From Epiperipatus broadwayi (Eukaryota > Animalia > Onychophora): a stretch of DNA of 64,000 nucleotides. Positions 2,503 to 44,302 of the stretch are shown piece by piece. The translations under genes were made by a program, and so were the position numbers. Under the pieces are notes generated by a model. The model saw only the letters and a list, made by a program, of their open reading frames with translations. It did not search any database and was not told where the DNA came from. The stretch is from the NCBI GenBank assembly GCA_028023455.1, contig JAQFVV010000003.1, forward strand, positions 19,158,001-19,222,000, given 5' to 3'. How positions within the stretch are numbered: the first letter of the stretch is position 1; each line of letters opens with the position of its first letter.

Positions 2503-4458
2503 ATGACTCACAATCAAGCAGCCGAAGTTGCTCTAGGCATAGTTTCAGCTGTCATTTCAGGAAAAATGAATCATACTCTAATACCGTTTGACCAACTTCC
2601 TAAAAACATAAATATAGCTTCTAAAACTGCAGATAAATATCTGAAATCTTATGGTTCTATTATTACTTTTGTAAAAGCTCATCCTGGCTTATTTGGAATA
2701 AAAGATAATTGCGTTTATCTTAAAGTTAACTATTTTTCACCACTAGTTAAAATGCTGAGCGAGCACCTTACAAAAACGGGTATTATTCATTCAAAAGATG
2801 TTGAACTTATGACTAAAAGTATGTCTGATGTTGAAAAATTACAACTTGAATCTGGTATTGATGTCTTTTTTGCAAAACATTATTGTTCTTTTAAAGTTTT
2901 GCCAAATTGTGAAGTTACTTTGAGATCAGAAATTGATCGTAAATTTATAAAACATTTGGTTAATAAGTTATTGCCTAATGATTTGAGTTTAGATGACTTG
3001 CTTAAAAATTTATCTGATGAAGAAATACAATGGATGGGTACAACAAAACATTTAATTGAAAACTACATAAAAAATAACACAAATGTATTTAACTATAGTA
3101 ATGAAATTGTAAGTTTAAACACGAATATAAGAAATATTTCTACGTGTATGATTATTTCAGAAGTAGGTCATATGGCTGCAAATGAAAATTCAAAACTGTC
3201 AAACAATATACAAGCATATGGTAAAATTACATTAATTTTAGAGAATGCTGCAGTTATTTATTGGGAAAAAGCAAATGTCTATATTTGGGCAGATAAGGAC
3301 AAATTCACAAATAAAAATATTAATTTAAAAAATATGTTAAAACTAGATGAAGTATTTGATTTTACTGCAAAAAGAGTAAATATTTCATCAATGTTTAAGG
3401 CAGAATATGTGTGGAAAGCAAATAATATAAAGAATAAAGTAACAGGACACAGTGGAAGCATTTTCGCTCTTAGTGAAAAACATGGAATTATAATAAATAA
3501 ATTAGGTTCTGTAGATGTTAGTGTTGATGTTTGTTACTGTGATCTAATAAAAGTTAAAAATTTATTTGAGTTTTTAAAAAAAAATGATCAAGTTTGTTAT
3601 GATGCTAAAGTAATTAATGTGAATGGATTTTCCAGGTTGCAAGCTGAACTTGTATGGAAAGGGAAGAAACCCAGAATTAATGCAGCTGTTTTCCCTCATG
3701 CAAGTGGTAATGTGTATAGTAAACTTGTTACAGAAGTTAAATCATCATCCAATACTAATTATCAGCCTCTTGTATTGTTATCCAAAACAAATGTTTCTGA
3801 CAATAATATAAATGGACAGTGTGGAAAAATTTCTCTAATAAATGAAAATCATGGTATTATAAAATATAAAAGCTGTCGGATAGAATTCAGTATTGTTGTT
3901 TGTTATCGATATGGCAAAAAAATCAATAACTTATACAATTGCTTCAAGGAAAATGATTATGTTAATTTTAATGCTGTATTAGTTTCAATCAACAATTCTT
4001 TCAAATGGCAGGCAACTTGTGTATGGAAAGGTTGTAAACCAATGCTAAATGAAATAAATTGCAATAATTTAGCCACAGAGACTAAACCCTTATCCATTTC
4101 AGATACTAAATCCTTGCTCAAATTGTCTCCAGCTAGTTCATTAAGTAGTACATCATTGCCTAATTTAGATAAGCTTACAAGTGATAGTAATCAATCCTTG
4201 GAAAATTATAGAAGTGAACCATCTGTTGAAAGTGAACATGAATTAAAACATGATTATTCATCACAACATTTAGATACATCTGATGATTTGGATCATTTAG
4301 CAAGCGAGTTAAATCGTGATTGTGTTGAATTTAGTAATCATTTTTTAAGTCAGTTGGAGTGTGAAGAAAAGAGTTTTCTGAAAAGTAAAACTAAAGATGT
4401 TGCCTGCCAAACTGTCAGTACTGGAGACATTCTTAGTTTTAAATTGTTTTTAATATAA
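2503..4458 (+). CDS. Egalitarian-related protein, paralog 1: 3 winged-helix (LOTUS-like) repeats, 3 cold-shock/OB-like repeats, C-terminal LC8-type QT motif
   Basis: Intact 651-aa ORF in a stop-rich background. Three ~68-aa repeats end in F..H...F.....V.L (aa 1-205). Three repeats G.I......G.I...F.A......A..VWK lie at ~3217-4041. C-terminus DVACQTVSTGDILSFKLF. Splice-acceptor-like AG at 2468-2469 and AATAAA at 4511-4516. Paralog at 42686. Family assignment is from recalled Egl motifs, not a search. Confidence 0.8.
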   Translation: MTHNQAAEVALGIVSAVISGKMNHTLIPFDQLPKNINIASKTADKYLKSYGSIITFVKAHPGLFGIKDNCVYLKVNYFSPLVKMLSEHLTKTGIIHSKDVELMTKSMSDVEKLQLESGIDVFFAKHYCSFKVLPNCEVTLRSEIDRKFIKHLVNKLLPNDLSLDDLLKNLSDEEIQWMGTTKHLIENYIKNNTNVFNYSNEIVSLNTNIRNISTCMIISEVGHMAANENSKLSNNIQAYGKITLILENAAVIYWEKANVYIWADKDKFTNKNINLKNMLKLDEVFDFTAKRVNISSMFKAEYVWKANNIKNKVTGHSGSIFALSEKHGIIINKLGSVDVSVDVCYCDLIKVKNLFEFLKKNDQVCYDAKVINVNGFSRLQAELVWKGKKPRINAAVFPHASGNVYSKLVTEVKSSSNTNYQPLVLLSKTNVSDNNINGQCGKISLINENHGIIKYKSCRIEFSIVVCYRYGKKINNLYNCFKENDYVNFNAVLVSINNSFKWQATCVWKGCKPMLNEINCNNLATETKPLSISDTKSLLKLSPASSLSSTSLPNLDKLTSDSNQSLENYRSEPSVESEHELKHDYSSQHLDTSDDLDHLASELNRDCVEFSNHFLSQLECEEKSFLKSKTKDVACQTVSTGDILSFKLFLI

Positions 4459-10800: not shown

Positions 10801-13800
10801 TTAATGAAACTATTATTGAAATATTTGAGAGAAAATGTTTCAATGATCTGGCATTTTCATTGATTTTTTGCACAGCATTTGTTAGTTATTACATTTTTTT
10901 GTCTGTCTGCCCATAATATTGTCAAATAACAATTTTTTTATAGATAATAGAAATATTTAATTAAAACAGAATGCTTAAAAAATTATTTTGGGAGAACAGT
11001 TTTTGATAATGATTACTAAAAGTAATATACTCACCATTTCAAAAATTATACTTTAGGTCAGATAAATAATTTGTTTGTTACTTAATGTTAGAAGCAGTTA
11101 TTTTAGACTATCATTGAATGATAATACTTAATTATTGTTGCTATAATCTGTTTTAACATATCTTTTGAAGATGATAATGGTAACAGTTAACTCCAGAATA
11201 CAGATTATTTAAGCACAGTAAATCAATGGAAGAAAATGGTGTAATATAACCAGATATCTATTTTCTGGCATATGGGTCTTCTTTTTTTTAATAAGGAGAT
11301 ACTAATAACATTTTTATTGATATCAAATGTTTGTAGCTAGTTAATTTAGGTTTAAACATTCAGTTAAGTGAACTGTCATTTATTTTATTGACTTTGAAAA
11401 TAAGTCATGGCTAATAAGAAATCACTGAATGGAAAATGCAAATCCAATGCTCTAACAAAAATCCAAATAGTAAACAATTGTAGGAATTTGGAATTGACAT
11501 TTAGAGTCTATCATTGCTTATTTTTCAATGTTTGGAATTAAGTTATAGATTTCACCACAATAATAAAATGTTTATTTGTAATCTTTTAACAAGTGACATT
11601 GTTAATATAAGGAATAATTATATAAACAAATTTAAAGAGGATATAGTTATCAGTAAAATTTACAAAATGATAAGTTTCTGCTGCTGAAAGAGAGGGTGAT
11701 GGAAATATGTTAGCTAGAAAGGATAAAGAAAAATGTGTCATCCCAGTTTTGGAATGTTAGATATTATTAAAGTATTAGGAAAATTAATAAAGTTTTGAGG
11801 ATATGATAAATAGATTTTGTGGAGTTAGTTTGAGGCTAAAATATTTGTGTGGGGATAATGGTGTTAAATTTTTAGATGTGTGAAATGTGTTCACTAGAAC
11901 TTATTTAAAACAGATTATATTTATTACAGGTGGGAGGGAGACAACATATCAGTTGAGTTAATTTGTAATTAATGTTATGATTCATTAAACTAAAGAATGG
12001 GGATGGAATATATATATGTAATTCAATAAGAATATAGTGTTTGAAATAAACATGAAAAAAAAGAATGTGTACATTTATGATTGCAAATAAGGTAATATGG
12101 ATGAAGAGGTGAAGGATGTAAGAGTAGAAAACTTTTTTTTAAATAGAAACTGCCTGGAAGTTATAAGACAGAATATAAGGATTTAAGGATGTTAATGTAA
12201 AAAAACTTGGTTTTATAAATATGTAACATTTTAGAAATATGAATAAATGTAAAGAATTGGAGGTTTTTGTATGAAAGATTTGTTAATAGTGGTACAGACA
12301 TGTTTTTGGAATGAAAAAAAACCTACATTTTCAGAATTGTAAAAGAAAGGGGCTAAATAGATATGATTAAAAAAAGAGGAGTTATAAAATTATTGTTAAA
12401 GAGGAGAAATCTTAGAAATTATAAATTTCTTATGTGGATTAAATTGAAATTGGATTTAAAAAAATGAATGTGTAGCATAATATATTTAACTTCTGGAAAT
12501 GGCAAGGATGTGAAAAAGATGATATGAAAGTATTTGGAAACTTTTATATAAGAATATAAATGAATTTATGAAAGAATAGTTTTATATTGATTGTGGATAA
12601 TATGAATGATCATATTAATGAAATTGATGGAGTGGAAAATATGAATGATGTATTATTAAAAAGGATGTGTAGGAAAGATGGATTGATAAATTTGAGTAAA
12701 GTAGAAGATAGAAAGTTTAAAAGGGCAAGCAGAATCTGAAGTAAATTTTTTATTATGTGTTGGTTTATAAAGAGAATTGAGAAAAAAACAATTTAAGGTA
12801 TAAAGTATATGAGAGGAATTATAATTTTATGTTAATAACATTAGAGATATCAGAAAGTTTAAATAATGAAATTTATAGTATGATTAGTAGAGATGATTGT
12901 GGAAATATGCAAGTCTTGAAAAAATATATGACAGGTGTTATTTTAGAAGTTGGAAAGAATTGATAGATATGACGAAGATTACAAATGAATACTTATTTAA
13001 AATTAACAAGATTAATATAAAAAAAAAATCAAAGGAAATTTTTTTTAGAAAATATAAAAGGTATGAAGAGATTATAGTGAAGCTGTTAAAAACCATATAG
13101 GAGAAAACATGGTAACAGTTAGATGCTATAGTTACTAAAGAACAAAAAAGTAACTAAATTAGAATTAAGATGGAAATAGGGTGAACTTAATAAGTTACAT
13201 TAAGAAATTAGTACTGCAGAAAGGAAGGGAAGATTGTGCAAAATTTTATAGATATATGAAGACAGAAAATGCAGAGAGAAGAGAGTGTGAAAATAGGGAA
13301 TAACTTGAAAAAATATTTAATGGATTTGTATAAAAACTTTGGGGGTAGGAGAATTGGTATATGATTAATTAGAAAGTTTAATTTTTGAGGAAATGCATAG
13401 AATGATAGATGTCAAATTTGGAGAGCAATAGGCAGAGTGGAAAATGCAAAACCACTAGATATTATGGCAGTTTAAATGGTAATTGGTTTGGAAAAGTATG
13501 CAAAGCTTGGTTTAAAGGTAAGTTTTAATAAAATTGTAGTTAATAATAAGATTCCAAATGAATGAAAGGTGTGAGAAATAGATTATTATATAAAGGGGAC
13601 AGATTTAGATTTTTAAATACTTAATAATCCTTAGTAAAATTTGCATAGCTTATAAAATATTTATACATTTTTTTAATGGGAGAGAATGAAATCTTGGATG
13701 AGATTCAAATTGGATATTGTTCAGAAAGAATAAGAGATAATTTACGTTGTATTTATTTATTAATTTATGTATTGCATTTTCAGATATAGAAAAGGCTTAT

Positions 13801-15216
13801 GTTGGAATGGTTAGAATTAGACTGTAGAGAAGGCTTGTGATCATAGACACAAGATTATACCAATTGAGGAATATAGAATCAGTGAAAGGTGAATGTGAAA
13901 ATTGGATTGAAACAAGTATATCCATTATCACATTTTCTTTTTAAGATAATTGGAGGATAACAAAGAAATATTAGGGATAGGATTGAGGATTCCTATAGTT
14001 GGAACTAGGAAAGTATGTAAGGTAATAGTAATAATACTGAACCCTACCATCTGATGGTGCTCTTTTTCGCCCATTTCACATCAATATACCATATCATGGG
14101 CCATCTGTTTGTTTACATAATATTACGGTAAAAGTTTTTTTTTTTTTTTTTTCAACCGGTTTTTTAATTTTTTTTATGTCAGTGACAGTAAACCAAAGTT
14201 TTATTTTATTACACCTGTGTGTTTTTTTTTTTTTAATAAACAAATACTTCGTTTTTATATGGTCTAGGGGTGTTGGTTTGTTTGTAAATTAATGACTAAC
14301 TGTCTGTAGGTTTCTTTACATAATATTACTTATGATAAACCAAATTTTTTTTTCACATGGGTTTTTTTTTTTTGGTTCGTTTTTTTAAGAAACAAACATT
14401 TTGTTTTTAGATGGTGTAGGGGTGTTGCTTTGCTTTTAAATTATTGATTAACGCTCCATCGGTTTTTTTACACAAAAATACTGTTGTTTTTAGATGGGGG
14501 GGGGGTTGTTTGCTTTTAACTTATCTTTTTTTTTTGTTGATGTTTTGATTTGCTGAAAGACTTCAACAATCCGGTACTTTTGAATAAACCAACACTTGGT
14601 TTTTTAGAGAGTGGAGGGGAGAGGGGTTGTTTTGATTATGAATTGTCGTCTTTTTTTTTTTTGTTGTTGTTAATTTTTTACAAGGCTTTTTTTTTTTTTT
14701 TTCAAATATTTATGCTACAGAAAGCTTTATATGATAGCGAAAAGTTCTTCCTTAATTTTTTGGGCCTTTCATTTTAAAAAAAGACATAAACAATTCGGTT
14801 TTGAAGAACACTTTTTTTTTAAGCTGAGGGAGGTGGGGTGGCGGGGAAGATTTGTTTTGATTTTTAATTATCGACTTCTTTTTGGATTTTCTTTTTGAAC
14901 ATTTTATTATGTTACCGCACAGTTCTTTATTATTATTTTATTTTATTTTTTTTGGTGTGGCCTTTTGAATAAACTCTCAAACACTTCTTTTTTTTTTTGG
15001 TATAATAAGTGAAACTTATCAAATATTACCTACTTACTTTATAATCATATGAACAACGAAAACAAGTTTTCCATAAAATAATTTATTGAATCAAAAAGAA
15101 ACGAAACTTTGGGCAAGTTGTGAAGCAAAATAAGTAAAAAAAAACAAACAACAAAACACCATTTTCAGGGCATAAAAAACAGCAGCCAAAAGTAACACGC
15201 AAATAAAATAACAGGG

Positions 15217-15687
15217 TGCTATGTCTTACGGTTTCTTAAGTTTAACCAATAAGTTAGCAATAAATACAATTTACACTCATTTATAATTCTATATATTTTA
15301 ATAACTACTTTCAACAACATGGACATACAATTATAATATAAAATAAAACACAAGATTTCATTTAGTTTATTTACATACTAATATAAACAATGTTCGCTAT
15401 TTACCAGTCCTTATTTTCATGCCTTGCCACAGTAGCCATTTTATCTACGGTTTTCTCTGCTACGGATTTCATATTTTTCTTAAGGCTGTGCACTGGTAAC
15501 ATCCCGGGAACTGAGAGCAATAAATCTATGCTATCAGTTTTATACTATACCCAATTTATCGGGCATATATCTTGGAATCCATAATTGACAGCAGCGCTCT
15601 CTTTATATTTTTATGGAGAAGCATTTACATTACGAGGTAAGTACAATGTCACTATTTATCACAAACCCAACATGTATATATATAGCA
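15217..15687 (-). repeat. 3' LTR (471 bp)
   Basis: Direct repeat of 19540-19995 with several substitutions and indels. TG...CA ends. A purine-rich PPT-like tract lies just inside (minus strand AGAGTCGGGCAAGGACG). Confidence 0.92.
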
Positions 15688-15999
15688 CGTCCTTGCCCGA
15701 CTCTAATAATACATATTACTTTAGTTTACTACATAGTCCTTAAATTTAACCGGTGGTCTCTGTATTCGAGAAATTTTAGGGCTATCATTTCTATTTTCCC
15801 TTTGCACTCTTGGTAAGTCCAGTTCTTGCTCTGTCACTTCATCTTCGGTCAGTTCTGGCTCATCATTCTTCCTATTTTCTTCTTTAGTCGGTCCCTTCAT
15901 GATGTGATTCATTTCTGGCCATATAGCTTCGTCTTTCTTTGTTTCACAACTCTCCCCATGATGGTGAAGGTGGTTTATGTGTTTTCTTAACACTTCCAC

Positions 16000-18900
16000 T
16001 TTCTAACTCAATTAGACAAAATCGCCTGGTAAAAACTTTACCACTTTGGTATTATTATTTCTACTGTTTCCAGGTAGTAATTTTGTCAAATGGGTCCTGA
16101 ATGTCTGTCACATCAATAGCTCCATGGAGTTTTACACATTGCAGTGATTGGAGTGAAGTGGAGCATACATAGCCTGTATCAAGGCTTCTGCTATGTTTTT
16201 GTTCTGAAGTTTTTTAATGTGTTTTTTTTTTAGTGCTGCACTCCTTGTTCTGCTATCTCATTGCTTTCGGGATGGTACGGGGGTCTAAGAAGGTGTTTAA
16301 TCCCTCCCTTGTTTAGAAAATCCATAAAAAAATTTTGAAGCAAAACCTGAACCATTGTCTGTCACAATAGTTTTTGGATAACCATGCATGGCAAATAGTT
16401 CATTTAACACTTGGAGTCCACACTAGTGTCCTTAACTATTCAATACTCTGTTCATTGAGAAAAAGCATCAATCACTAATAGGTGTCCATCTCACAGGATA
16501 ATGTGATCCAGATGAACACGTGTCCATGGAGATTTGGGCGGTTCCTATGTTTCATAATGCTTTGGTGGTAATCTGGCCACTTGTTGGCAGTTCCTGCAAT
16601 TTTTTATCTGGGTCTCTATTTCTTTGTTAAGTATGACTGTGCGAGGGCCTTCATTCATACCACTCCTGAGGGTCCTTGATGAAATAGGTTTAGGACTTGA
16701 GGCCTACCTTCCATAGGTACTAACTGTCATTATTTAAGATGCATTCATTGTACACAGAAAGTTTATCCCTAGCTATCCAGATAGCTTTGCTCAATTCACT
16801 AGGGCATTTCTTTGGCCACCCATTTCTGATCCACTTTATGAGCTGTACATAACCATTTTTTCTTGTCCATTCCTTTATAGTCGTGTTACTTATCTCCTTT
16901 GACTGTAATGTGTCAATGTAGTTTATTTCTTTAGTTTTGACTACCCTTTCTGTGGTATCTGGCAGCCTAAACAAAGTTTCTGTGTGTGCGATTATTTTCC
17001 CAGGTTTGTATATTAGTTTATAGTCATATTGTGACATCAAGTTTGTCCATCGCACCATATGTTGAGTTGGGGGTTCTATAGATCCCTTTTCACTGCCGAA
17101 AATCCCTGTTAAGAGGTGCTGATCTGTATAGATGGTAAAGTTATAGCCATACTCATATTGGTTGAATTTTTTTATCACAAAAATCACTGCCAACACTTCC
17201 TTGTCTATCTGGCTATAATTTTTCTCTGCAGCTGTCAATACTCTTGACGTGAATACTATTGGATGCTCCCCTTCATAGCATGGGTGCGATATGACTGCTC
17301 CCACACCATACTTGGATGCATAGGTCATGATGTTCACTGCCCAGTCGCTTCGGTAATGTACCAGTAGCGCTTCCGCCATTAATGTCTTTTACACTTCTAA
17401 AAGCATTCTCCTGTGCGTCAGTCCAGATCCATCACTTTCTTTTTTAACAATGTGTATAATGGTGACAGCAAGTGTGACTGTCCTTCTAAAAAACTCATAA
17501 AAGTTTAAAAGTCCTAAAAATGCCTGCAATTCTTTGACATTTTTGGGGTTTTTTAGCATTTTTTATAGCCTTTACTTATTTGGGGTTGGGTTTTTGACCG
17601 TTTTAATTTATTATGGGTCACAGGAACTTGATTTCTCAAGCTGACCAAATGCATTTATTAACATTAAGCTTTGCTTTGGCTTGAGACAGTCCTGAGCAAA
17701 CCTGATCTACCTGTTTCTTGAGTTCTGCCTGTCGCACCAATAATTAAAATGTCATCTAAATAAGGTATCACTCCATTCATAGATCTGAATAGCATGTCCA
17801 TTTTAGCCTGGAACACATTCGGAGCAATGGTTATCCCATAAGGCAATTTATTACATGTGTATAATCCTTTATGCATGGTCAGTGTAAGTAATTCGGATGT
17901 ACCCCTTGTTACTGGGATCTGGTGGAAAGCTGCTCTTAGATCAATTTTTGCAAAATACTTGGCCTTCTGTAATGATGCTAGTATTTCCTTTACGCTTGGG
18001 ACTGGGTATGCACCTTTGTTTATATATCTGTTGACCATAACTTGATAATCCCCGCATAATCTTATACTCCCATCTGGTTTTACTATGGTTACAATAGGAG
18101 TCGCCTAGGATGATTCTTCAATGAGTGTTAATACTCCTTTTGATACCAAATCCATTATTGCCTTTTCCATCCTCTCCCTCATTGCAAATGGCACTTTTCT
18201 GGGCTTATAAGCAATGGCTTTGGCTTCTGGTACTAATTCTATGTCTACTGGTATTGTTCTAAATTCCACTAGGCCTGATGTAAATAGTTATGGATATTTT
18301 TTTTTCTTTTTCTATACGGACAGTCTTTAGTATATTTATGTGCATTCCCAATGGGGAAAACCAGTTTCTGCCTAATAATGGACTGTCTTTATTAACTATA
18401 TACAGTGTCAAAGATTTATGTCTGGAGTTAAGTGTCACAGGCACAGTTAATTTTCCTCGGATATCAACTTTGTTTCTGTTTATATCTGTTACAATTGTAT
18501 CAGCCTTACATAGCTTTAATTTATATTTACTGCCTCGAGTGATCTCTGTCCAATCCTTAAGTGATATCAACAACAATCCAGCTCCACTATCCACTTCCAT
18601 TGTGATCTCTTTTCCACAGACCTGCAAATCCAGAAGAAGGTGATCTGTTTTATTGTTTCTTTTTGATATAGTCTTAATGGTTGATTTTTTATATTTACTT
18701 CTACCTGGGGTTTAGGATCTACATTTTTTGTCTGCCTCGCCAACTTTATAGTAACACATGGCAACTAAATGCCCTCTCTTGTTACATTTTCTACATATTT
18801 TATTCTTGTGCCTACAGCTACTTTTTGTATGACTGGATTTTTCACAGCAAGTACAATTTTGTTGTTTGGTGTGTCCGCCAAAAGGCATAGAGTCACATTT

Positions 18901-19400
18901 TTTTATTTCTCTACTGAAAGCGATCTTTTCCGGTGATTTTGATCTGGTATATTCTGGTGCGATGTTGAGCATGGCCTCTTGCGTGGCACATTTATCAATC
19001 GCTGTTTTGTATGTTAATTCCGGATCATTCAATAAGACTCCTGAAGTTTGCGTCCGTCATTCTGTACAAGAACTGTTCCAACAATGCGTAATTTATCTCT
19101 CGACAGTATTCACATTCCTTGGCCAGTTTCCACAATGCAAGATCATATCCACATATTTTTTTTGTGGTGACGTTTCTCAGCCTAAGGCATGCTATCTATT
19201 TAGACTTTCGGCAGAAAATATTCATTCAACTTTTGTATAAATTCCTGATATGTGAAATCTTCAGGATGCTTTGGGTTGGTAATCCTGCTTGCTAATTGGA
19301 TTGTGTCTTTTCCCACTAAATATAATATTGTGGAAATCTTATATCTGTCATCCTCAAATTTTATTTATGAACATATAATATTCTACTTGTTCAATATAAC
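16000..19400 (-). pseudogene. Fragmented gag-pol of the Mag-like element
   Basis: ORF fragments 18712-19032 (gag), 18259-18627 (PR), 17664-18038 (RT) and 16720-17379 (RNase H), plus integrase pieces broken by stops and frameshifts. Boundaries approximate. Confidence 0.9.
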
Positions 19401-19516
19401 TCTTCCATGAGTCAACATTATTTACGTCGAACTCGCGCATTATAGAATTTATGGCCGCCATGTTGTTTTTATACCTAACTTTTTTTACGAGTGCCTGACT
19501 TTAATCTTGGGCTTTT

Positions 19517-19536
19517 AATCCTGTATGACTGCATCA
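19517..19536 (-). promoter_or_regulatory. Decayed primer-binding site, tRNA-Ser-like
   Basis: Minus strand TGATGCAGTCATACAGGATT starts 3 nt after the 5' LTR. It resembles the recalled complement of a tRNA-Ser 3' end (TGGCGTAGTCGGCAGGATT), mostly through transitions. Confidence 0.5.
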
Positions 19537-19539
19537 CTC

Positions 19540-19995
19540 TGCTATGTCTTAGGGTTGTCTTAAGTTTAACTAGTAACATAGCAATAAATACAATTTACTT
19601 TCATATTTTAATGACTACTTTCAACAACATGGACATACAATTATAATATAAAATAAAATCCACAAGATTTCATTTAGTTTATTTACATACTAATATAAAC
19701 AATGTTCGCTATTTACCAGTCCTTATTTTTATGCCTTGCCACAGTAGCCATTTTATCTATGGCTTTCTCTGCTACAGATTTCATATTTTTCTTAAGGCTG
19801 TGCACTGGTAACATCCCGAGAACAGAGCGATAAATCTACGCTATCAGTTTTATACTATACCCAATTTATCAGGCATATATCCTGGAAACCATAATTAACA
19901 GCAGCGCTCTTTATATTTTTGTGGAGAAGCATTTACATTACGAGATAAGTACAATGTCACTATTTATCACAAACCCAATGTATATATATGTAGCA
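19540..19995 (-). repeat. 5' LTR (456 bp)
   Basis: Direct repeat of 15217-15687, followed by the TSD CAGGG. Confidence 0.92.
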
Positions 19996-22900: not shown

Positions 22901-23239
22901 TTTTATAACGTGGAATGCGGTCTTTCCCACGAAAGTGTTGATGGAGTTCTCGACAAAACTTTTTTTGGCAAATCTTTTACCTTTCATTTACTTCACATTT
23001 TCAACCTAGTCCTAACTCCAATCTTAATTGTTTTTGTGCACAAGACTTCATTCTGTGAAAGCAATGATAGTCAAGGTTAGAAGACTGGTGTTATAATTAA
23101 TAATTTTTATTAGTCATTGATTAGAGTAGAGATTATCCAATAATGAATAATATTTCTGTAGTGTAATTTTCATAACGCCATTCTCACATATGGTAGGGAT
23201 TGGTTTCCTTTCATTTTTAACACCTTGTGGAGGGATAAC

Positions 23240-23612: not shown

Positions 23613-24157
23613 CAAGTTTTTACGCATATGTTTTCCTGAAGGTTTGTGATGATGGTGTTTTAGTTGTATTTATTTATTGGACTATTTCCATCATTTTATA
23701 TCTTTATCATTGTTCAATATATATAGATAGCAACTTACTACAGTTTTAATTGATATATCGAATGTGTTGACTTCAAGTATAAATAATTTTTATTAATCAT
23801 TTGTTAGACTAAAGATTATCCAATAATGAATAATATTTTCATAGTATAATTTTCACTACACCATTCTCACACAAGGTAGGTACTGGTTTCTATCCACATT
23901 TAGCACTTTGTGGAGGGATGTAATCATAACCATGACCAAAGACATGAAAGATTTATGATCCCAATATGATCATTGCACAAGACAATACAATCAATAACTT
24001 TGGAATCAGATTTGGAAAGGAGTTTCAATTCTGAAAATTATTGTTTGCGTTGTGAGTAGTCAAATTTATTAGAGATTTTTCAGTTGGAATAATTTTAAAA
24101 ATATCACTAAAAATGATGTTTCCATAATATTAGATCATTATGGCAATAGAAATAATT

Positions 24158-24227: not shown

Positions 24228-25623
24228 AATAGAAATAATTGTAAAATCATTAGTGGAAAGATCAAACTATTTCACATCAGGTAAGACTTATTTCTAAAAA
24301 ATAACTTTTTATACTCTTTTATTTTTAAAAGCATGTATTTGTATAAATCATGGCTCTTATTCTCAAGAAGCTGTAAAGTCACCAACCAAGACGGCGATTG
24401 GTGACCGAAGGCGGATGGTGCAAAGAATCCCCTGATTGTGGACCCAGACTGCCATTTGATGATGATTTTTTATTTAGCTACTTACAACTGCAAATCACTT
24501 TCAAGTAAAGGAAGATTGCAAGAATTAGAAGAACTGTCTTGTATCAAATGGAACATTAGTGGACTTTGTGAAGTTAGAAGAAAAGGTGAAGAGACAATTG
24601 ATTTAAAAAGTGGACATGTACTCTACTATAAAGGCACTAATATTGGAAATATAAGTGGAGTAGGATTCATTATAAATGAAAAGTGGAAGAACAACATTGT
24701 GGAGATTGATGGTATATTGGACAGAGTGGCAAGATTAGTTATACAACTTAATAGCAGATACCAAATGCAGATAATTCAGATTTATGCCCCATCAAGTTCT
24801 CATAGTGATAAAATAGTAGAAGATTTTTATATAGATGTACAAAAGGCTTTTAATCAGAGTAAACAATATTTTAAAATTGTTATGGGAGATGTTAATGCTA
24901 GAATTGGTAAACAAATGAAAGATGAAAGTGCTGTAGGTAATTTTGGTTATGGTAATAGAAATGAGAGAGGACATAGACTTGTGGAGTTTGCAGAAAAAGA
25001 AAAACTTTATATTATGAATTCTATTTTGAGAAAAATGTTAAAAGGAAATGGACATGGAAGCATCCAAATAAAGGTACAGCAGAATTGGATTATATTTTGG
25101 CTAACAGAAAATACATATTTCAAGATTGTAATGTTCTTAATAAATTTAACACAGGAAGTGATCATCGATTAGTAAGATGTAAGATATGTATTAATGCAAA
25201 ACTAGAGACAAAAATTTTTAAGAAAAACAATATTTACAGTTGATATTCCTAATATTCAGAAACATTCTAATGAATTCAAATTAGAACTTACAAATCGGTT
25301 ACAGGTATTAATAGATTTTGAATATGATTCAGATTTGAATTAAATTAATATGAAAATAACTGATACATTTGTAAAAACTGCAACAAAGATAGCTGGTAGA
25401 AAAAAGCAGCAATTGACTAATAAAATTTCTACTGAAAGAGAATTTATGACGAAAAGGAATAAACCACTAAACATCACATGATCACTATCTCATACTAGCA
25501 CAATTGTTATTAAATGAGGCAAAACTCTCCATACAGTAATGCCACTCTGTGCCAATCAGAGCAATCAATGGATGCCAGAAGGCTTGTGCATAAAATCCCT
25601 ATCTAATGCCTACTCATCCAATA

Positions 25624-25884: not shown

Positions 25885-28039
25885 TATTGGATGAGCGAGC
25901 ATTAGATAGGGATTTTATGCACAAGCCTTCTGGCATCCATTGATTACTCTGATTGGCACAGGGTGGCACTACTGTATGGAGAGAGTTTTGCCTTGTTTAA
26001 GAAAAGGAATATGAAGATATACAAAATTGATGCATTAAAAAGGATTGAATATCTCGAATTTTGTAAAATGGTGTGGAAAAGAGTTGAAAATTATATAAGA
26101 AACTATAACTGAACTAGCAAGGAAAGCTGTAAAGGAGAATAAAAGCTCCACAGTGTAAAACTACATTTTGATATTGGTAGGAAATTTATATCTGCAATAG
26201 GAAAAAAGGATGGAATTATTATTAAAAAGAGATGAAAGAATAGAAGACTTCTATCAAGAATTATATAGTAATAAAGAACAAGTACCTCCTATATCTATTA
26301 TATCCTCCAAATTGCCCAGAATTTTAAATGAAGAAGTGAGACATGCAATTAAATTTATGAAGAAAGGGAAAGTTCCAGATAATGATGGAATTTTAATTGA
26401 TATATTAAAAGAAGGGAAAGCTCCAGTTAATGATGGAATTTATAATTGATATATTAAAAGAAACAGGTGAAGAAATTAAATTTTTTTTAGCAAAGTTATA
26501 TACCAAATATCTAAATGACAAAGATGTACCACATGATTGGAAGAATGCAGTATTAATATTTTAAAAAGGTGATAAAGATATTAGAAATTACAAACTTATC
26601 AGCCTTATATATACAAAATTTTAATCAAGATAATTATAGCTCGTCTACAGAGACTTGGATTTCCACCAACCAAGAGAACAAGCTGGATTTAAAAGTGGTT
26701 TTAGTACAGTAGATCATATCCAGATATTGAGAGAAGTTATAGGAAGGACAACTGAATATGAGTTGCCATTATGCTTTGGATTTGTAGATTATGAAAAGGC
26801 ATTTGATTCTATAAACATTTTTTCAGTGATTAAAGCAGTGTATCATCAAGATATAGATCCAGGATATTGCCATATTTTAAAGAATATTTATGAAAATGCA
26901 ACAGCAACAATTAGAGTACATAATGATAATAGGAATGTCAACATTGAGATGGGTGTATGATTGAATGACTCCATATCTCCAAAACTTTACAGCAGTGCTG
27001 CAAGAAATATTCTTTGGATTAAAATGGGAAGCTAAAGAAGTGAAAGTAAATGGAGATTATTTAAATCATTTAGATTTTGCAGACGATGTAGTTTTTGCAA
27101 ATAATACTTTAGAGCTGCATGAAATGTTGCAGGAGTTATCAGATGAAAGTAGGACTAAGGATAAATGTTAAAAAGACTAAAATAATGTTTAATGGATTTA
27201 CTCAAAATATGAAAATAATGATTATGATGTGTTAGAAGTTAACAGCTACAAATACCTGGGTCAGATTATTAATATAGATGGAAACGTAATGGATGAAATT
27301 AATTGTAGAATTAAACTTGGAGTGTTTTTGGTAGAAATAACTTGATACTAAAAGGAAATGTGCCTATGTGTTTGAAAAGATTTTTAATAAGTGTGTTTTA
27401 CCAGTTCTTTCTTATGTATCTGAGACTTGGACACTTAATAGAAGAGTAATACAGAGACTTCAGTCCATTTAAAGAAGTATGGAGAGATCCATGTTGGGAG
27501 TAACAAGATCGAAAATGCAATATGTGTAAGAGAACAAACAGGTGTTACTGACCTCATTGAAAAAATTAAAAGAAAAGTGGAGTTGGGCTGGACATATTAC
27601 TAGAAGAGATTATAATAGATGGACAATTTAAATCTTAAAGTGGATTGTAAAAGACTCAGAAAGAGACCATGTGTGAGATGGAATGATGAAATAAAGTGTG
27701 CAGGGGTGACATGGAGAAGTTAAAGATTAGAGAAGATGGATTGAACTTGGAGAGACCATCTTGCAGTGGATTGATAATGGTTGTTGATGTATTTGCAGTA
27801 ATTCTTCAATAAATACTAGTCTTTATTAGATTATAAATTATTGTATTACAGTTAGATATAGTCTCTAAAATTTAAATATAGTATCTGCTAAAACAAATTG
27901 ATTAGTTTGGTTCATTGTAATTTACATTGTTGAAGAATATATATTTAGGGATAATTCTGTATAGTACTATTTACACTAGGGTGAATGGCTATTTCCAGTT
28001 GATCAATATTGTAATGGTATGGAAAATAGAGGGTTAATA

Positions 28040-39517: not shown

Positions 39518-42333
39518 ACATGTTGGAAAGAAAGTTCATTGTCTCCAAAATTAAAGATCTTTAACCAAAGGTAATTATAGTAAATAGCAGTAGAATACTA
39601 TAACAAAGTGATAGCAGCTGATTGTCAGTGATAGTTTGCCATTGTTTTGCTAGCGTCAGTGCAGTTTATTTTTTCTCAGTTTTAGTCTTATATAAGAGTC
39701 ATTGAATTGTCAGTTTTTAGAGTCTGAAAGATTAGTCGAATTTTATTCAAAAAGGAAATAACTGTATTCATCGGGGATTATAATTTCTGTAAAACAATCA
39801 ATGATTGCAATCCTAATACTGTATCAACTTTTTAAAACTTCTGAGATATTAATCTTTAATATCAATCTAAGTGCAAATTCATCAACATTTGTTATTACTC
39901 TGTATGAGTTAATGCATTGATAAAGTATTAGACTAGAGTATAAGGGCATTGAATTTATTCCAGTTCTATCATTTATCAAGCATTCAAAATAATGTCTACC
40001 CTTTCTTCATAAGAATATTTCTCACCAATTTTTTACTATACATACAGATATCACAACATTCTAATACTTCTGTGGGCTTACTGTAAAACTCATTCCATTA
40101 AATTTTGCATTCATTTTAATAGTACCAGCATGCATTTTTCTTGGGTGCCTTTCTCTTCCAACTCCAACAGTCACATCATAAGCAATGAGTACAATAGTTG
40201 AATATGAAGTTGCAATGTGCGTCAATCCTACTTATAACTAGTATTTTCTGACAGGGAAGGTCAATTTATTAGAAAGAATCTGACTACACTATCTCTTAGT
40301 ATTCATTGATTTTAATCGTACTTATTAATTTTACTCAATGCTTAGTTATATATAAACTGAAAAAGAAAGTCTGTATATTGATTAATAATTATTATTTAGA
40401 GAGATCAGTGTTTTTCAACTTTTTTTTTTTTTTTTTGCAATGAGACCTACTTCTTATGTTATTTTAATATGGCTACTTTTAAATGTTTAGTAATATGAAA
40501 TTAGGCTATTTTTTAAATATGAATTGAACATGTTCAGGACCATCATTCACTTGCAATCCTCACTACATGAGAATTATGTTCTGAATACCATTTATTTTGC
40601 TATCAATTATTTTGATAATCGATTTTTTTTTTGTTTTTAATAGAAGCAAGAATAGGAGGAATGTCAACCAGAAATAAAGAACTGCTAATATAATTTTTAT
40701 ATTAAAAAACTGAAACTTTCAAATGAAATCCACTTTATATAAAAGAAGATTCTAATCACTTCGAATTTGTTCTTAAGTTTAAGAAAGCTAATGAAGTCAT
40801 CCTAAAAATCCTATGAGCCTGTTATGTGCTTAAATGCTCTGATGTTTATATTTTTGATTAACATCTATAAAACTTTTACTAGAATGATGAAAATGTATTT
40901 TTTATACATGTAGAATGTATTTTTGTCATAAATGTCTTTTTTTTTCAAGATTCAAGAAATTTATTTTCTAATCTATCTGTTTATTAGAAGAATACTTGCT
41001 CTTAAAAATACTTAGGCATTAATCATAACTGCAAACACATAATTCAATGTTGAGCATTGATTACTTTAACAGTTTAGTTCAGTTGATTTGTCCTCATTCA
41101 TTAAGAAGTATAAAAACTAACCAGATTAGATTGCGAGTTCCATTATGAAAAAAAAAATGTATATCTTACTGGCTGCTAACTAGAAAAGAAAAAAAACAAT
41201 ATTGTATTTTTTTTTTTCAATAAAGCCCACCCCAAGAAATACTGTAAAGTAATTATTAAAGTAATAAACATAAATTATTGTATTTTGGGGCATAAATTAT
41301 CTGAATAGGTATGCATAATACATATATAAAAGGTGCTTACATTATTTTTTAGAATACAGAAAATCACAATGTTGAAAAAACATTATTTTGTTTTTGAAGC
41401 CCAAATTAACTAAATGTATAAAAGTTAAAAAGAAATGCATAAGCTATCTGAAAAATTGTGCTGATACTTTTGAACTGTGGTCCTAGCTCCTGAATATTGT
41501 GTATAAAAAGGAAAATAAACTTTGGATATCTGATCAGATTAAAATTAAACTTTACCTTGAAGAACATCAGATTAAAATTGTCTTATATTAATCTTATTAT
41601 GTGTTTGTTTAATTCATGAAGATGAAGCAAAAAGAAAAAGGCTACCTTTGACATAAACTTTGTAACCACAATAATGAATGTAATGTTGAGTAACTTGAAA
41701 AAAAATTACTGGTAATATCATTCTGAATTGCCATTCTTAAGATCATCAGGAATAAGTTATAATGTGTATATGAAATCTTTAACTTCTAAGAAGTAGTTAA
41801 ATTCTAGATGTGAACTTTGCTCATACAATGTAGCAGATAACATATTAACTATAATACATTTTCATAGGGGAAGTTCTTTGACTAAACTTTGAAAACTTAG
41901 AATTTTGATAATAAGAGAGTATTTTTGTCATTCCTATACACCAAGAAAATGTCACATTACTTTCTGCTTGTGTTCAATCCACTTTTAAAAGCTATCTCGT
42001 AATTCTTCTTGTAAGTCACATCCCTAGACTAGTTTCTAATTTGCAATATTGAGAGCTTCTGAACCTAATGTATTTACATCAATTAGCCATCTTTTACTTC
42101 TTTTTAAAAAAATACTATTGATTGTATGGAATGGGATGTTTTGATATATGCCATTCTAACTAAAACAGAATTTTGTAAATTAATCGCTGCCTTAAATTCA
42201 GGTCTATATGACTACACAAATGATTGGCATGAATTAAAGCATTAGAATGTATTTGAATTTAAAACTATTAACTTATTAATATAAAAGAAATAAAGGCAGC
42301 TGCTTTATCTTAGAAGCATTAAATCTTCAAGTC

Positions 42334-42368
42334 CTCACTGATGATTCTAAATAAGAAACATGTATTAG
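42334..42368 (+). ncRNA. Possible minimal hammerhead motif, weak stems
   Basis: CTCA CTGATGA TTCTAAATAA GAA ACATGT A TTAG. The core and palindromic stem III are present, but stem II has only ~2 bp and stem I has one mismatch. Confidence 0.4.
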
Positions 42369-42685
42369 CACTATCATTTGGTATCCAATGGATGGTTCTG
42401 AAGTAGAATAAGTGCAACTTTTCCTATATGTGTATCAATGCTATAAATGACAGATTGTCTTTCTTTCTCATTATTTGGAAAAATATTTGTTGTAATTTTT
42501 TTAGGTTCTTTCATTATTAATAGTATGTTCTATTACATATGATTATTTTTAGATAATATTCACTTACTGGCTGAAATTTGACTGCGCTGGTAAAGCTTTT
42601 GTATTTGGAAATTTATGTTATAAACTTAATAGAAATATATATCATAGAGATTTTTTTCTAATATATTTTTTTCCTTTTCTTTAGA

Positions 42686-44302
42686 ATGAACACAATGGAT
42701 AGCAAAGCAGCTACAGAGTTCTTTAGCAAGCAGTTCAAGCTACGTGGTGAACAAATAATTCACATTAACAGTTTACAAGGGCATTTAGGACAAGCATCTA
42801 AAAGTGTTAGAAAATATGTATTAAGCTTTAAAACGTTCAATGATTTTTTAAGTCGTCATAATGATATTTTTCAAATTCATAAAAATAACGTCACATTACT
42901 TACAAAAACAGAAAATTGTACACTTGTTAAATATCTTAAAGAAACTTTGCAGAAAGTTGTCTGTCTAACTTTTAAAAATATTATCGATTTGAAAGCAATT
43001 CTTTCTGCTGAAGATTGTTTAAAATTGGGAGATGGAGAAGAAGGGATTATGGCATTTCTGGTAAAAAACTATCGTATATTCCGAATTTTTAGAGATAGAC
43101 GAATATGTCTGCGTGCAACTATCGATGCAAATATTATTAAAAACCTTGTTATTTTAATGAATAAAAAAAATTCAATTTCTTTTAAAAATATACCGGGTTA
43201 TTTGAGTAGATTGAATTCAGAAGAAAGAAATTGGTTAGGAAATAATGAAGTTGCTTTACAGAATTATTTGAAAGATAATATTAATGTATTTATTATTAAT
43301 ACTGAAAGTCTTTCTTTAATACCTAGTATTACATGTGAATTTAATCATCTAACGGATAAAAAGATTCATTACAATACTGTGCCTATAATTACAAGTAATG
43401 CAAATACAGAAATGAAAACAAATGATAATCTAAAATCTGAACCGTCTCCAGCTCATCAATCCACAGAGATGATTTCAGGATATGGAAAGGTTATACAGCT
43501 TGCTAATAATTGTGGTACAATTGTAACTGAAGATAATCAATTTGTTTATTTTGGAATGCAAACATTTGAAAACAATTCTGATTTTCTTTCACAAGACATT
43601 CTAAAAATAGGTGATGCAGTATCTTTCAAAGCTAAAATAAATTCTATTGATAATAAATATCAAGCAACTCAGACATCGCGCTGTCTTTATTCAGATTATG
43701 CAAATATTACAAGCACATTTACTTATTTAACACCGAGTCCAAATGGTTTCATTTCTGGAGGTACAGGATCAATATGTTTATCAAGTCCTGATTATGGTTA
43801 CATTAATGTCACAAATAAAACACAAATATATTTTTCTGTTGAAGTATGTTACTACCATCAAACAAAAGTTTCAAATCTGTTTGAATCTTATCATGAAAAT
43901 GAAAGTGTCCGTTTTGATGCTATAGCAAGTGATGATTTTAAACCTTTTAAATGGAGAGCTACATTAGTCTGGATAGGAATAAAGCCTAATCTAGTCTCAA
44001 ATAATCCCAGTTCAAAAGAAATATCACAGGATCATACAATCGCAAGTGTAAATTCACCTCATGTTATTTCACAAGAATCTTCTTGTGAGAAGAACTCTGA
44101 GCAAAAAATTGATCAACTGTCATCAGAGTCATTTTCAAAAAGAAATGACTTTGTAAATGAAATAAAATTACAGCCACAGATAAGTTCTGATTTAAAAAAT
44201 GTTGGTAACTCAAAGTCTATAAAAACTAAAACTATTGTTGCCGAGTGTCAAACTGTTTCTACAGGTGAAATATTGTCTTTCAGTTTATACTTAAATGACT
44301 AA
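42686..44302 (+). CDS. Egalitarian-related protein, paralog 2: 3 winged-helix (LOTUS-like) repeats, 2 cold-shock/OB-like repeats, C-terminal LC8-type QT motif
   Basis: Intact 538-aa ORF. First repeat INSLQGHLGQASKSVR..FNDFLSRHNDIF resembles the recalled Egl repeat IKSLLGHRSQASPQVR..FTDFL.KH.D.F. OB-like repeats at ~43478-43987 end in KWRATLVWIGIKP. C-terminus AECQTVSTGEILSFSLYL. Strong acceptor TTTTTTCCTTTTCTTTAG at 42667-42684 and AATAAA at 44322-44327. Confidence 0.8.
   Translation: MNTMDSKAATEFFSKQFKLRGEQIIHINSLQGHLGQASKSVRKYVLSFKTFNDFLSRHNDIFQIHKNNVTLLTKTENCTLVKYLKETLQKVVCLTFKNIIDLKAILSAEDCLKLGDGEEGIMAFLVKNYRIFRIFRDRRICLRATIDANIIKNLVILMNKKNSISFKNIPGYLSRLNSEERNWLGNNEVALQNYLKDNINVFIINTESLSLIPSITCEFNHLTDKKIHYNTVPIITSNANTEMKTNDNLKSEPSPAHQSTEMISGYGKVIQLANNCGTIVTEDNQFVYFGMQTFENNSDFLSQDILKIGDAVSFKAKINSIDNKYQATQTSRCLYSDYANITSTFTYLTPSPNGFISGGTGSICLSSPDYGYINVTNKTQIYFSVEVCYYHQTKVSNLFESYHENESVRFDAIASDDFKPFKWRATLVWIGIKPNLVSNNPSSKEISQDHTIASVNSPHVISQESSCEKNSEQKIDQLSSESFSKRNDFVNEIKLQPQISSDLKNVGNSKSIKTKTIVAECQTVSTGEILSFSLYLND

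What the first reader, a model, noticed from the sequence alone, without database searches (positions are those of the whole stretch)
2503..44302. Egalitarian-derived proteins with cold-shock/OB repeats in place of the exonuclease-like domain
Seen: both ORFs have three ~68-aa N-terminal repeats, 2-3 beta-rich repeats ending (W/F).A..VW.G.KP, a Ser-rich linker and a shared C-terminus CQTVSTG[D/E]ILSF.L. No DEDD-like exonuclease motifs are visible. Established (recalled, unverified here): Egalitarian has N-terminal winged-helix repeats that engage BicD, a central 3'-5' exonuclease-like domain and a C-terminal dynein light chain site AESQTLSTGDI. Paralog 2 repeat 1 (SLQGHLGQASKSVR) resembles an Egl repeat (SLLGHRSQASPQVR). 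Inference: this is a lineage-specific family that keeps both Egl motor-coupling ends but swaps the central module for tandem single-stranded nucleic-acid-binding folds. It may be an undescribed class of dynein-linked RNA cargo adaptors or germ-granule proteins.
Basis: partly seen in the sequence, partly recalled or inferred. Interest (0 to 1): 0.85.

Follow-up and report, generated by a model that had tools for sequence, protein, structure and literature searches.

The report
Egalitarian-like RNA-binding genes with cold-shock domains
Two neighbouring intronless genes encode relatives of the fly mRNA-transport protein Egalitarian that carry cold-shock RNA-binding domains instead of its exonuclease-like core; they are divergent copies of a widespread, unstudied invertebrate family and lack the domain that Egalitarian uses to hold the dynein adaptor BicD.

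Summary
ORFs 2503-4458 (651 aa) and 42686-44302 (538 aa) are paralogs. Each has three Egalitarian-type winged-helix domains (Pfam WH_Egal), then 3 or 2 beta-rich repeats, a Ser-rich linker and a shared C-terminal CQTVSTG(D/E)ILSF tail. No exonuclease domain is present.

- The repeats are cold-shock domains. A family profile hits Unr, CSDE1 and YB-1 structures. The AlphaFold model (pLDDT 94) matches CSD folds.
- A tail profile hits one PDB sequence only: Egalitarian residues 959-980. These include the two serines whose mutation abolishes dynein-light-chain binding.

Two claims fail.
- The family is not lineage-specific. At least 183 relatives occur in molluscs, annelids, nemerteans, a brachiopod, flatworms, an acanthocephalan, ticks, a centipede and a priapulid. 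Their usual layout is ED1-ED2-ED3-CSD-tail.
- The window copies do not keep both motor-coupling ends. Their first domain is ED2-type, and the BicD-binding ED1 is absent. A spliced leader joins 1-3 nt upstream of the start codon (junction ambiguous over a shared AG), so I see no upstream coding exon.

Most likely they are LC8-dimerised RNA-binding proteins that are not coupled to BicD. The scan noted a third copy about 11 kb upstream of the window. I found no paper describing this architecture.

The parts
2503..4458 (+). Paralog 1 (par1): intronless ORF of 651 aa, layout WH-WH-WH-CSD-CSD-CSD-linker-tail
2539..2727 (+). par1 winged helix 1 (aa 13-75). Weakly ED2-type and degenerate: KNINIAS where the family has GHLSQAS
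2737..2928 (+). par1 winged helix 2 (aa 79-142), divergent, type not assignable
2938..3123 (+). par1 winged helix 3 (aa 146-207). Family W3-type, and the best Pfam WH_Egal stretch in par1
3208..3432 (+). par1 cold-shock domain 1 (aa 236-310), the weakest (family HMM 24.6 bits)
3439..3675 (+). par1 cold-shock domain 2 (aa 313-391)
   Evidence: 55 bits
3808..4044 (+). par1 cold-shock domain 3 (aa 436-514)
   Evidence: 76 bits
4399..4455 (+). par1 C-terminal LC8-type tail (VACQTVSTGDILSFKLFLI)
42683..42684 (+). AG splice acceptor after a polypyrimidine tract. RNA contigs carry 15-21 non-genomic letters 5' of it: a probable spliced leader, joined 1-3 nt before the ATG
42686..44302 (+). Paralog 2 (par2): intronless ORF of 538 aa, layout WH-WH-WH-CSD-CSD-linker-tail. 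Covered end to end by RNA-run contigs of related species
42704..42904 (+). par2 winged helix 1 (aa 7-73). Clearly ED2-type, with motif SLQGHLGQAS
   Evidence: (68.9 bits to W2 profile)
42917..43117 (+). par2 winged helix 2 (aa 78-144), divergent, weakly W3-like
43130..43324 (+). par2 winged helix 3 (aa 149-213), W3-type
43469..43693 (+). par2 cold-shock domain 1 (aa 262-336). Has a weak Pfam DUF7930 hit
43751..43990 (+). par2 cold-shock domain 2 (aa 356-435). Modelled at pLDDT 93.9 as a CSD fold; keeps aromatic residues at the RNP1 and RNP2 positions (YGYI, IYFS)
44240..44299 (+). par2 C-terminal LC8-type tail (AECQTVSTGEILSFSLYLND)

Best explanation
These are two of at least three clustered paralogs; the two in the window lie on the same strand. 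They belong to a protostome-wide, uncharacterised family related to Egalitarian. The canonical family member has Egl domains ED1, ED2 and ED3, then one cold-shock domain where Egl has its exonuclease-homology/XAD module. It ends with the same conserved C-terminal element that in Egl binds dynein light chain LC8.

The window copies are divergent, fast-evolving variants. They are intronless and have lost ED1, which is Egl's BicD-binding and RNA-reading domain. They start directly with an ED2-type domain and carry 2-3 cold-shock domains.

Shown here: domain identities, homology of both ends to Egl, absence of ED1 and of an exonuclease domain, presence of par2 in RNA-labelled runs, and more synonymous than non-synonymous change.

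Inferred: the tail binds an LC8 dimer and so pairs two chains, as it does for Egl. The paired protein binds RNA through its cold-shock domains (single-stranded RNA), possibly also through the ED2-type helix. Without ED1 it is not coupled to BicD-dynein. It would then act as a dimeric post-transcriptional regulator rather than a transport adaptor.
For: Winged helices: Pfam WH_Egal and PDB Egl chain 9rvy_D.

Correspondence with Egl: the family W1 profile matches Egl 14-79 (ED1) at 69 bits, overall E 5e-31. The W2 profile matches Egl 98-166 (ED2) at 57 bits.

ED1 is missing: window domain typing gives par2 as 2-3?-3 and par1 as 2?-?-3. No ED1-type match occurs anywhere in the six-frame window.

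Cold-shock domains: profile hits to Unr 1.5e-7, CSDE1 3.8e-6 and YB-1 9e-6. The model has pLDDT 93.9. Foldseek top hits are UNR, Unr, YBX1 and Lin28 CSDs at probability 1.0 and TM about 0.6.

Tail: 41 of 61 homologs end with (C/T)QTxSTG(D/E)I..T..Y. The tail profile hits only Egl 959-980 among 177,635 PDB sequences (E 0.0024). That stretch holds S965 and S969. The double mutant loses Dlc binding and dimerisation (10.1101/550277).

BicD binds ED1 (PMC13186709).

Expression: contigs of RNA-labelled runs span 42683-44480/44530 in two related species at about 92% identity. They start with a 15-21 nt non-genomic leader at an AG acceptor.

Selection: among 35 changed codons listed for one relative, 15 are synonymous and 20 are not. 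With 129 synonymous and 519 non-synonymous sites, crude pN/pS is about 0.3.
Against: No binding was tested. LC8 binding rests on homology, and position -1 of the anchor is Cys here, Ser in Egl and Thr in the classic TQT motif. The conserved element is about 22 residues, longer than an LC8 groove peptide, so it may do more than bind LC8.

Most of the five CSDs have lost RNP1 aromatic residues, so their RNA affinity is uncertain.

par1 is degenerate in its ED2-type helix and could be losing function. I could not lay reads on par1.

The runs are only guessed to be RNA. The pN/pS estimate rests on a partial list of differences.

BicD could in principle be bound by another surface.
Confidence: 0.62

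Rival explanations
1. One reading: dynein-linked RNA cargo adaptors that keep both Egl motor-coupling ends. The N-terminal winged helices would bind BicD and the tail would bind the dynein light chain, with CSDs as a new cargo-binding core.
For: The tail is homologous to Egl's Dlc site. Egl-type winged helices are present. Canonical family members elsewhere keep a well-conserved ED1, so the model may hold for them.
Against: In Egl, BicD is bound by ED1 (PMC13186709). Neither window protein has an ED1-type domain, and no ED1 exon is in the window. The par2 mRNA begins 1-3 nt before the ATG. Dlc's main role for Egl is dimerisation rather than motor linkage (10.1101/550277).
Confidence: 0.13
2. 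Modulators of a canonical family member. The ED1-less copies share the LC8-binding tail and could be paired by LC8 with the full ED1-ED2-ED3-CSD protein, or compete for LC8 or RNA. They would then tune or antagonise it.
For: The tail is conserved while ED1 is lost. There are several tandem, diverging copies. ED1-less 2-3-C forms also occur in other taxa.
Against: It is not known whether this genome has a canonical copy. No evidence for mixed dimers exists. This is pure inference.
Confidence: 0.12
3. Decaying duplicates: recently expanded copies with no retained function, their open frames being a transient state.
For: par1 has degenerate ED2-type and CSD motifs. The paralogs share only 27% identity. 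The neighbourhood is rich in transposons.
Against: Open frames of 651 and 538 codons in 27% GC DNA are not expected by chance. The tail and last CSD are conserved between the paralogs and with distant phyla. A full-length par2 transcript is present in related species at about 92% identity, with crude pN/pS about 0.3.
Confidence: 0.08

Closest known systems
Egalitarian (Drosophila Egl; C. elegans EGAL-1)
   Same: ED-type winged-helix domains, with par2 domain 1 matching Egl ED2 residues 104-171. The C-terminal element is homologous to Egl 959-980, the dynein-light-chain site. The overall order is the same: N-terminal EDs, central nucleic-acid-binding module, disordered linker, C-terminal tail.
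   Different: No 3'-5' exonuclease-homology domain or XAD; cold-shock domains stand in their place. No ED1, the domain that binds BicD CC3 and reads RNA bases via His31 and Cys35. Of ED2's base-reading Ser127 and Gln128, par2 keeps only Gln and par1 keeps neither.
The unnamed CSD-type Egl-like family. Databases call it 'Egal-1 winged helix domain-containing protein', 'egalitarian protein homolog' (Haliotis) or 'EGAL1-like' (Mya). Examples: Lingula XP_013412851, Opisthorchis, Priapulus, ticks.
   Same: Winged helices of the same types, the same CSD with the W.AT.VW.G.KP ending, and the same C-terminal (C/T)QTxSTG(D/E)I tail.
   Different: Canonical members are ED1-ED2-ED3-CSD, about 570-630 aa. 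The window copies lack ED1, have 2-3 CSDs and are very divergent (at most about 40% identity in single domains). Ticks show another variant, one W3-type helix plus 4-5 CSDs.
CSDE1 / Unr (multi-CSD RNA-binding proteins) and Y-box proteins
   Same: The central repeats are the same fold and are closest in sequence profile to Unr and CSDE1 CSDs. This includes a CSDE1-like ...VW....P ending.
   Different: CSDE1/Unr has no Egl-type winged helices and no LC8-type tail. Several window CSDs lack the RNP1 aromatic residues.
C. elegans LIN-66
   Same: It combines a functional cold-shock domain with a winged helix that Pfam places next to WH_Egal (WHD_lin-66). That family is recorded on some canonical members.
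   Different: In LIN-66 the CSD comes first (residues 101-171) and no LC8-type tail is reported. Both LIN-66 papers state that no homologs are known outside nematodes. The relationship was not tested here.
LOTUS/OST-HTH proteins (TDRD5, TDRD7, Oskar, MARF1)
   Same: Egl domains are LOTUS-like winged helices (PMC13186709). TDRD7 also has N-terminal LOTUS repeats followed by beta-rich modules (from my own knowledge, not checked here).
   Different: The Pfam OST-HTH match is below threshold (E 0.062). The beta-rich modules here are CSDs, not Tudor domains.

Membership tests
Egalitarian (Egl/EGAL-1) | ED1 winged helix that binds BicD CC3 | tested here: not met
   The family ED1 profile matches Egl 14-79 at 69 bits. 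It scores only 17.2 and 11.9 bits on the first domains of par2 and par1. No ED1-type match occurs in six-frame translation of the window.
Egalitarian (Egl/EGAL-1) | ED2 winged helix | tested here: met
   par2 aa 12-79 aligns to Egl 104-171 (E 8e-5) and scores 68.9 bits on the ED2-type profile. par1 matches only weakly (15.9 bits).
Egalitarian (Egl/EGAL-1) | 3'-5' exonuclease-homology domain plus XAD | tested here: not met
   No exonuclease family appears in Pfam at E up to 1. That position is occupied by CSDs. None of the 61 homologs has one.
Egalitarian (Egl/EGAL-1) | C-terminal dynein-light-chain-binding element | tested here: met
   The tail profile hits only Egl 959-980, which includes S965 and S969. 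This is sequence homology only; binding was not tested.
CSD-type Egl-like family (Egal-1 winged helix domain-containing proteins) | WH_Egal domains followed by a CSD with the W.AT.VW ending | tested here: met
CSD-type Egl-like family (Egal-1 winged helix domain-containing proteins) | C-terminal (C/T)QTxSTG(D/E)I..T..Y tail within the last ~30 residues | tested here: met
   Present in both paralogs and in 41 of 61 homologs.
CSD-type Egl-like family (Egal-1 winged helix domain-containing proteins) | Canonical ED1-ED2-ED3 order | tested here: not met
   par2 is typed 2-3?-3 and par1 2?-?-3. They are variant members, as are ticks (3-C-C-C-C) and the 2-3-C forms.
Cold-shock domain (PF00313 clan, CSDE1/Unr type) | Five-stranded beta-barrel OB fold | tested here: met
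   The AF2 model has pLDDT 93.9 and strands in CSD order. Foldseek matches CSD structures at probability 1.0 and TM 0.56-0.65. The profile hits Unr, CSDE1 and YB-1.
Cold-shock domain (PF00313 clan, CSDE1/Unr type) | RNP1/RNP2 aromatic nucleic-acid-binding residues | tested here: inconclusive
   par2 CSD2 keeps them (YGYI; IYFS). The other four CSDs keep RNP2-side aromatics at most, and par1 CSD2 keeps none. Read against the alignment.
LC8 (DYNLL) TQT-motif partners | TQT-type anchor in a disordered region that binds the LC8 groove | not testable with these tools
   The motif is CQT here, SQT in Egl (a proven binder) and TQT in tick and fluke relatives. It needs a binding assay or co-folding.
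LOTUS/OST-HTH | Match to PF12872 | tested here: inconclusive
   E 0.062, 13.6 bits against a cut-off of 23.8. PMC13186709 describes the fold as LOTUS-like.
LIN-66 | WHD_lin-66 (PF26288) plus an N-terminal CSD | not tested
   PF26288 gave no hit in the Pfam copy used. It appears only in precomputed labels of some relatives. The domain order differs.

The most novel reading that the evidence does not exclude
Protostomes have a second, unstudied Egalitarian lineage. In it the ED1-ED2 dsRNA/BicD module and the LC8 tail are joined to cold-shock domains instead of the exonuclease-like core. That lineage may be the BicD-dynein mRNA adaptor of spiralians, where Egl-type RNA transport has not been described. 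This genome would then have expanded it into ED1-less copies that pair through LC8 and act as motor-independent partners or antagonists of the canonical adaptor. LIN-66 of nematodes might be a remnant of the same lineage.
Probability: 0.2. Interest if true: 0.8.

Novelty: new variant of a known kind. Interest (0 to 1): 0.55.

Why it matters
Egalitarian is the best-understood link between localising mRNAs and dynein. It has been studied almost only in flies, and its RNA pocket needs the exonuclease-like/XAD module.

This work shows a conserved sister architecture that keeps ED1, ED2 and the light-chain element but uses cold-shock domains. It occurs in molluscs, annelids, flatworms, ticks and priapulids. 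That gives a concrete candidate for mRNA transport or translational control in those animals. It also gives a natural experiment on how the Egl scaffold works with a different RNA-binding core.

The window's copies add a further natural variant, without the BicD-binding domain. They separate the LC8-pairing function from motor coupling.

Tried and rejected
- Word-indexed protein search with par2 found nothing. The exhaustive profile search was needed.
- Single-sequence AlphaFold of par2 failed (pLDDT 29). Only the CSD with a 143-row alignment folded well.
- Pfam does not recognise the window's CSDs directly. It finds PF00313 in only 7 of 61 homologs.
- PDB searches with the two-sequence profile and with the single tail peptide found nothing. 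Family profiles were required.
- Organism identification failed. The window's own proteins are not in the protein collections. A Gypsy ORF gave only hits of at most 49% identity from mixed taxa. The leader sequence is in no searched paper. Transcript contigs of the two best homologs gave no clue.
- The leader is not encoded in the window.
- Rfam at gathering threshold finds nothing in the window.
- I rejected a Tudor/SN-like reading of the beta repeats, since CSD hits dominate.
- I rejected direct LIN-66 orthology as unproven.
- Literature searches found no paper on this architecture. The library holds open-access papers and preprints only.
Full report
**What is there**

The window is AT-rich eukaryotic DNA (GC about 0.25-0.31 outside a transposon). 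It holds two long + strand ORFs: 2503-4458 (651 aa, par1) and 42686-44302 (538 aa, par2). They are paralogs. BLASTP aligns about 420 residues at 27% identity (E 2e-27), and aligns the last repeat plus tail separately (E 1e-19). No further copy or fragment lies in the window (tblastn and family HMMs on the six-frame translation). Another reader of this scan noted a third copy about 11 kb before the window start, which I could not read. Transposon ORFs lie between the two genes: Gypsy-type at about 16.7-19.0 kb on the minus strand, and RTE/APE-type at 24.4-27.0 kb.

**N-terminal repeats**

Pfam assigns them to WH_Egal (PF23713). For the first 215 aa of par2 the match is E 4.5e-16 with three stretches. 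For par1 it is E 1.6e-6. phmmer against PDB sequences finds Egalitarian (9rvy_D), aligning par2 residues 12-79 to Egl 104-171. The recalled Egl string SLLGHRSQASPQVR is in that chain.

The 2026 cryo-EM paper on Egl-BicD (PMC13186709) describes these features of Egl:
- It has three LOTUS-like 'Egl domains' (ED1-3), then an exonuclease-homology domain plus XAD, and a C-terminal dynein-light-chain site.
- ED1 binds BicD CC3 and reads RNA through His31 and Cys35.
- ED2 reads RNA through Ser127 and Gln128.
- ED3 is divergent and dispensable for binding the TLS localization signal.

**Central repeats**

Pfam sees nothing significant in them directly. An exhaustive profile search of 1.84 billion representatives with the par1/par2 alignment returned 61 proteins, with the repeat as the best-matching part. 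Of these, 54 carry WH_Egal, 7 carry PF00313 (CSD), 4 carry DUF7930 and none carries an exonuclease domain.

I delimited 143 repeat instances with an iterated HMM. Their profile hits these solved structures:
- Drosophila Unr CSDs (7zhh, E 1.5e-7)
- human CSDE1 (2ytv, 3.8e-6)
- YB-1 (9e-6)
- further matches to bacterial Csp proteins and S1 domains

With that alignment, AlphaFold2 models par2 residues 354-438 at mean pLDDT 93.9 as a small beta-barrel. Foldseek's top PDB matches are UNR CSD4, Unr CSD9, YBX1, YBX2 and Lin28B CSDs, at probability 1.0 and TM 0.56-0.65. Swiss-Prot models give CCAR1/CCAR2 S1-like domains and Csp proteins. The repeats are therefore cold-shock domains of the CSDE1/Unr type.

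Only the last CSD of par2 keeps aromatic residues at both RNP positions (YGYI, IYFS). The others are partly or wholly degenerate there.

**C-terminal tail**

Forty-one of the 61 homologs end with (C/T)QTxSTG(D/E)I..T..(Y/F). A 31-position profile of 43 tails hits exactly one of 177,635 distinct PDB sequences: Egalitarian residues 959-980, KLVDAESQTLSTGDVVITKIFF (E 0.0024). That stretch contains S965 and S969. The double mutant S965K/S969R (egl2pt) abolishes Dlc binding and Egl dimerisation. Forced dimerisation rescues RNA and BicD binding, so Dlc's main role there is to pair Egl (10.1101/550277). The tail is therefore homologous to a proven LC8-binding element. Binding by the window proteins is inferred.

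**The family is broad, not lineage-specific**

Named members include:
- Lingula; ticks (Rhipicephalus, Haemaphysalis, Ornithodoros, Dermacentor); liver flukes; an acanthocephalan
- Priapulus, Strigamia, Darwinula and a tapeworm

A search with the ED1-ED2 region of the Lingula protein gave 183 hits at E <= 1e-5. The 120 listed all scored E <= 1.5e-49. Among those that carry a name they span gastropods, bivalves, a chiton, an octopus, annelids and nemerteans, and are about 560-720 aa. Some are labelled 'egalitarian protein homolog' or 'EGAL1-like', and the only precomputed Pfam labels are winged-helix families (PF23713 in all; PF26288 or PF24812 in some).

Position-specific profiles from 24 canonical members show collinearity with Egl:
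- W1 matches Egl 14-79 (ED1; 69 bits, overall E 5e-31).
- W2 matches Egl 98-166 (ED2; 57 bits).
- W3 has no specific partner, in line with ED3 being divergent.

The canonical layout is ED1-ED2-ED3-CSD-tail. Variants include ticks (one W3-type helix plus 4-5 CSDs), Priapulus (1-2-3-C-C-C-C) and some 2-3-C forms. Exonuclease-type Egl clusters in the ESM Atlas are nematode and arthropod. The two architectures therefore coexist in Ecdysozoa, and which core is ancestral is open.

**The window copies lack ED1**

- par2's first domain scores 68.9 bits on the ED2-type profile, 30.3 on W3 and 17.2 on ED1-type.
- par2's third domain is W3-type, and its middle domain is weakly W3-like.
- par1's first domain is weakly ED2-type (15.9 against 11.9 bits), and its third is W3-type.
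- No ED1-type match exists elsewhere in the window.
- par2 keeps GHLGQAS where the family has GHLSQAS and Egl has GHRSQAS. This retains the Gln128 equivalent but not the Ser127 equivalent. par1 has KNINIAS and keeps neither.

**Transcript evidence**

Logan contigs of runs labelled 'RNA?' were laid on 39600-45500.
- In two related organisms, single contigs of about 1.75-1.8 kb cover 42683/42782 to 44480/44530 at about 92% identity.
- In the best-matching run, short contigs mostly >=99% identical (6 of 7) cover parts of the ORF.
- Three contigs from three runs start their match at 42683 and carry 15-21 letters that do not match the DNA upstream. These are ATTTTAGTTGGTACTGTACTG in the near-identical run and GTTTTACTTGGTACGGTACAG in a relative.
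- The genome has a polypyrimidine tract and AG at 42683-42684, 1-3 nt before the ATG.
- The leader is not in the window.

This pattern fits spliced-leader trans-splicing, with a leader of about 23 nt if the shared AG is counted. A far-upstream 5' exon is not excluded. Either way, no coding exon precedes the ATG in that transcript.

Among the differences listed for one relative, 15 changed codons are synonymous and 20 are not. The region has about 129 synonymous and 519 non-synonymous sites, giving a crude pN/pS of about 0.3. The list is partial. par1 could not be tested, because only one read-laying run is allowed.

**Mechanism**

Most likely (about 0.6) these are LC8-paired RNA-binding proteins. 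The tail docks into an LC8 dimer and brings two chains together. Their CSDs, and perhaps the ED2-type helix of par2, then bind RNA. Because ED1 is absent, coupling to BicD and hence to dynein-dynactin is not expected.

It is poorly supported for these copies. Alternatives are modulators of a canonical paralog through shared LC8 or RNA, or decaying duplicates; par1 looks the more degenerate.

**Comparison and novelty**

I found no paper describing an Egl-like protein with cold-shock domains. Databases list these proteins as uncharacterised or name them after the winged helix alone, and Pfam misses the CSD in most of them.

C. elegans LIN-66 combines a functional CSD with a winged helix related to WH_Egal. 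Its domain order differs, and its authors report no homologs outside nematodes. A link is only a lead.

I class the finding as a new variant of a known kind: an Egl-related scaffold with a CSD core, here in an ED1-less, multi-CSD, tandemly expanded form. The source organism could not be identified. Spliced-leader use and the family's distribution are compatible with a spiralian, but that is a guess.

Noticed in passing
window 42683-42684 and RNA contigs: Probable spliced-leader trans-splicing. Contigs from three runs carry a 15-21 nt non-genomic 5' leader joined at an AG acceptor 1-3 nt before the par2 ATG. The leader is about 23 nt with the shared AG and ends in GAG. It differs at a few positions between related species. 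It is absent from the window and from the searched literature.
   Followed up: partly
window 2440-2502: par1 has a similar polypyrimidine tract and AG (about 2468-2470), 32 nt before its ATG. A stop lies just upstream in frame. This may be a trans-splice acceptor; it was not tested with reads.
   Followed up: no
window about 14000-20000, minus strand: A Gypsy-type LTR retroelement. Its ORFs include RNase H/integrase-linker (16720-17379), RT (17664-18038), protease (18259-18627) and a zinc-knuckle Gag (18712-19032). GC is 0.31-0.385 against about 0.27 around it. The best database relatives are only 31-49% identical.
   Followed up: partly
window 24438-25172, 26655-26960, 57670-58658, 62742-63143: ORF fragments of non-LTR (RTE/APE-type) endonuclease and reverse transcriptase. 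The copy at 62742-63143 is related to the one at 24438-25172.
   Followed up: no
window 44556-44670: One contig of the near-identical run skips 113 nt (ends TA..AT, not an intron signature) downstream of par2. It is probably an indel polymorphism or a small insertion.
   Followed up: no
window 1-64000: Rfam at gathering thresholds finds no RNA family anywhere in the window. Other readers' notes report hammerhead-type ribozyme elements at 1742-2144 and 23047-23973. If those are real, they fall below Rfam's curated scores.
   Followed up: partly
window 12001-14000: Strong strand asymmetry (GC skew 0.60, AT skew 0.15) in a 2-kb stretch. It is probably a simple or tandem repeat; not examined.
   Followed up: no
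P0041 (Darwinula stevensoni, 2361 aa); P0010, P0016: The same CSD type occurs 15 times in one ostracod protein that has no winged helix. Conversely, two proteins carry 7-8 Egl-type winged helices with no CSD or only one. The two modules are shuffled widely.
   Followed up: no
canonical family members (for example P0030, P0143 Octopus, P0144 Tubulanus): Precomputed Pfam labels include PF26288 (WHD_lin-66) on some members. This hints that nematode LIN-66, reported to have no homologs outside nematodes, may be related to this family.
   Followed up: partly
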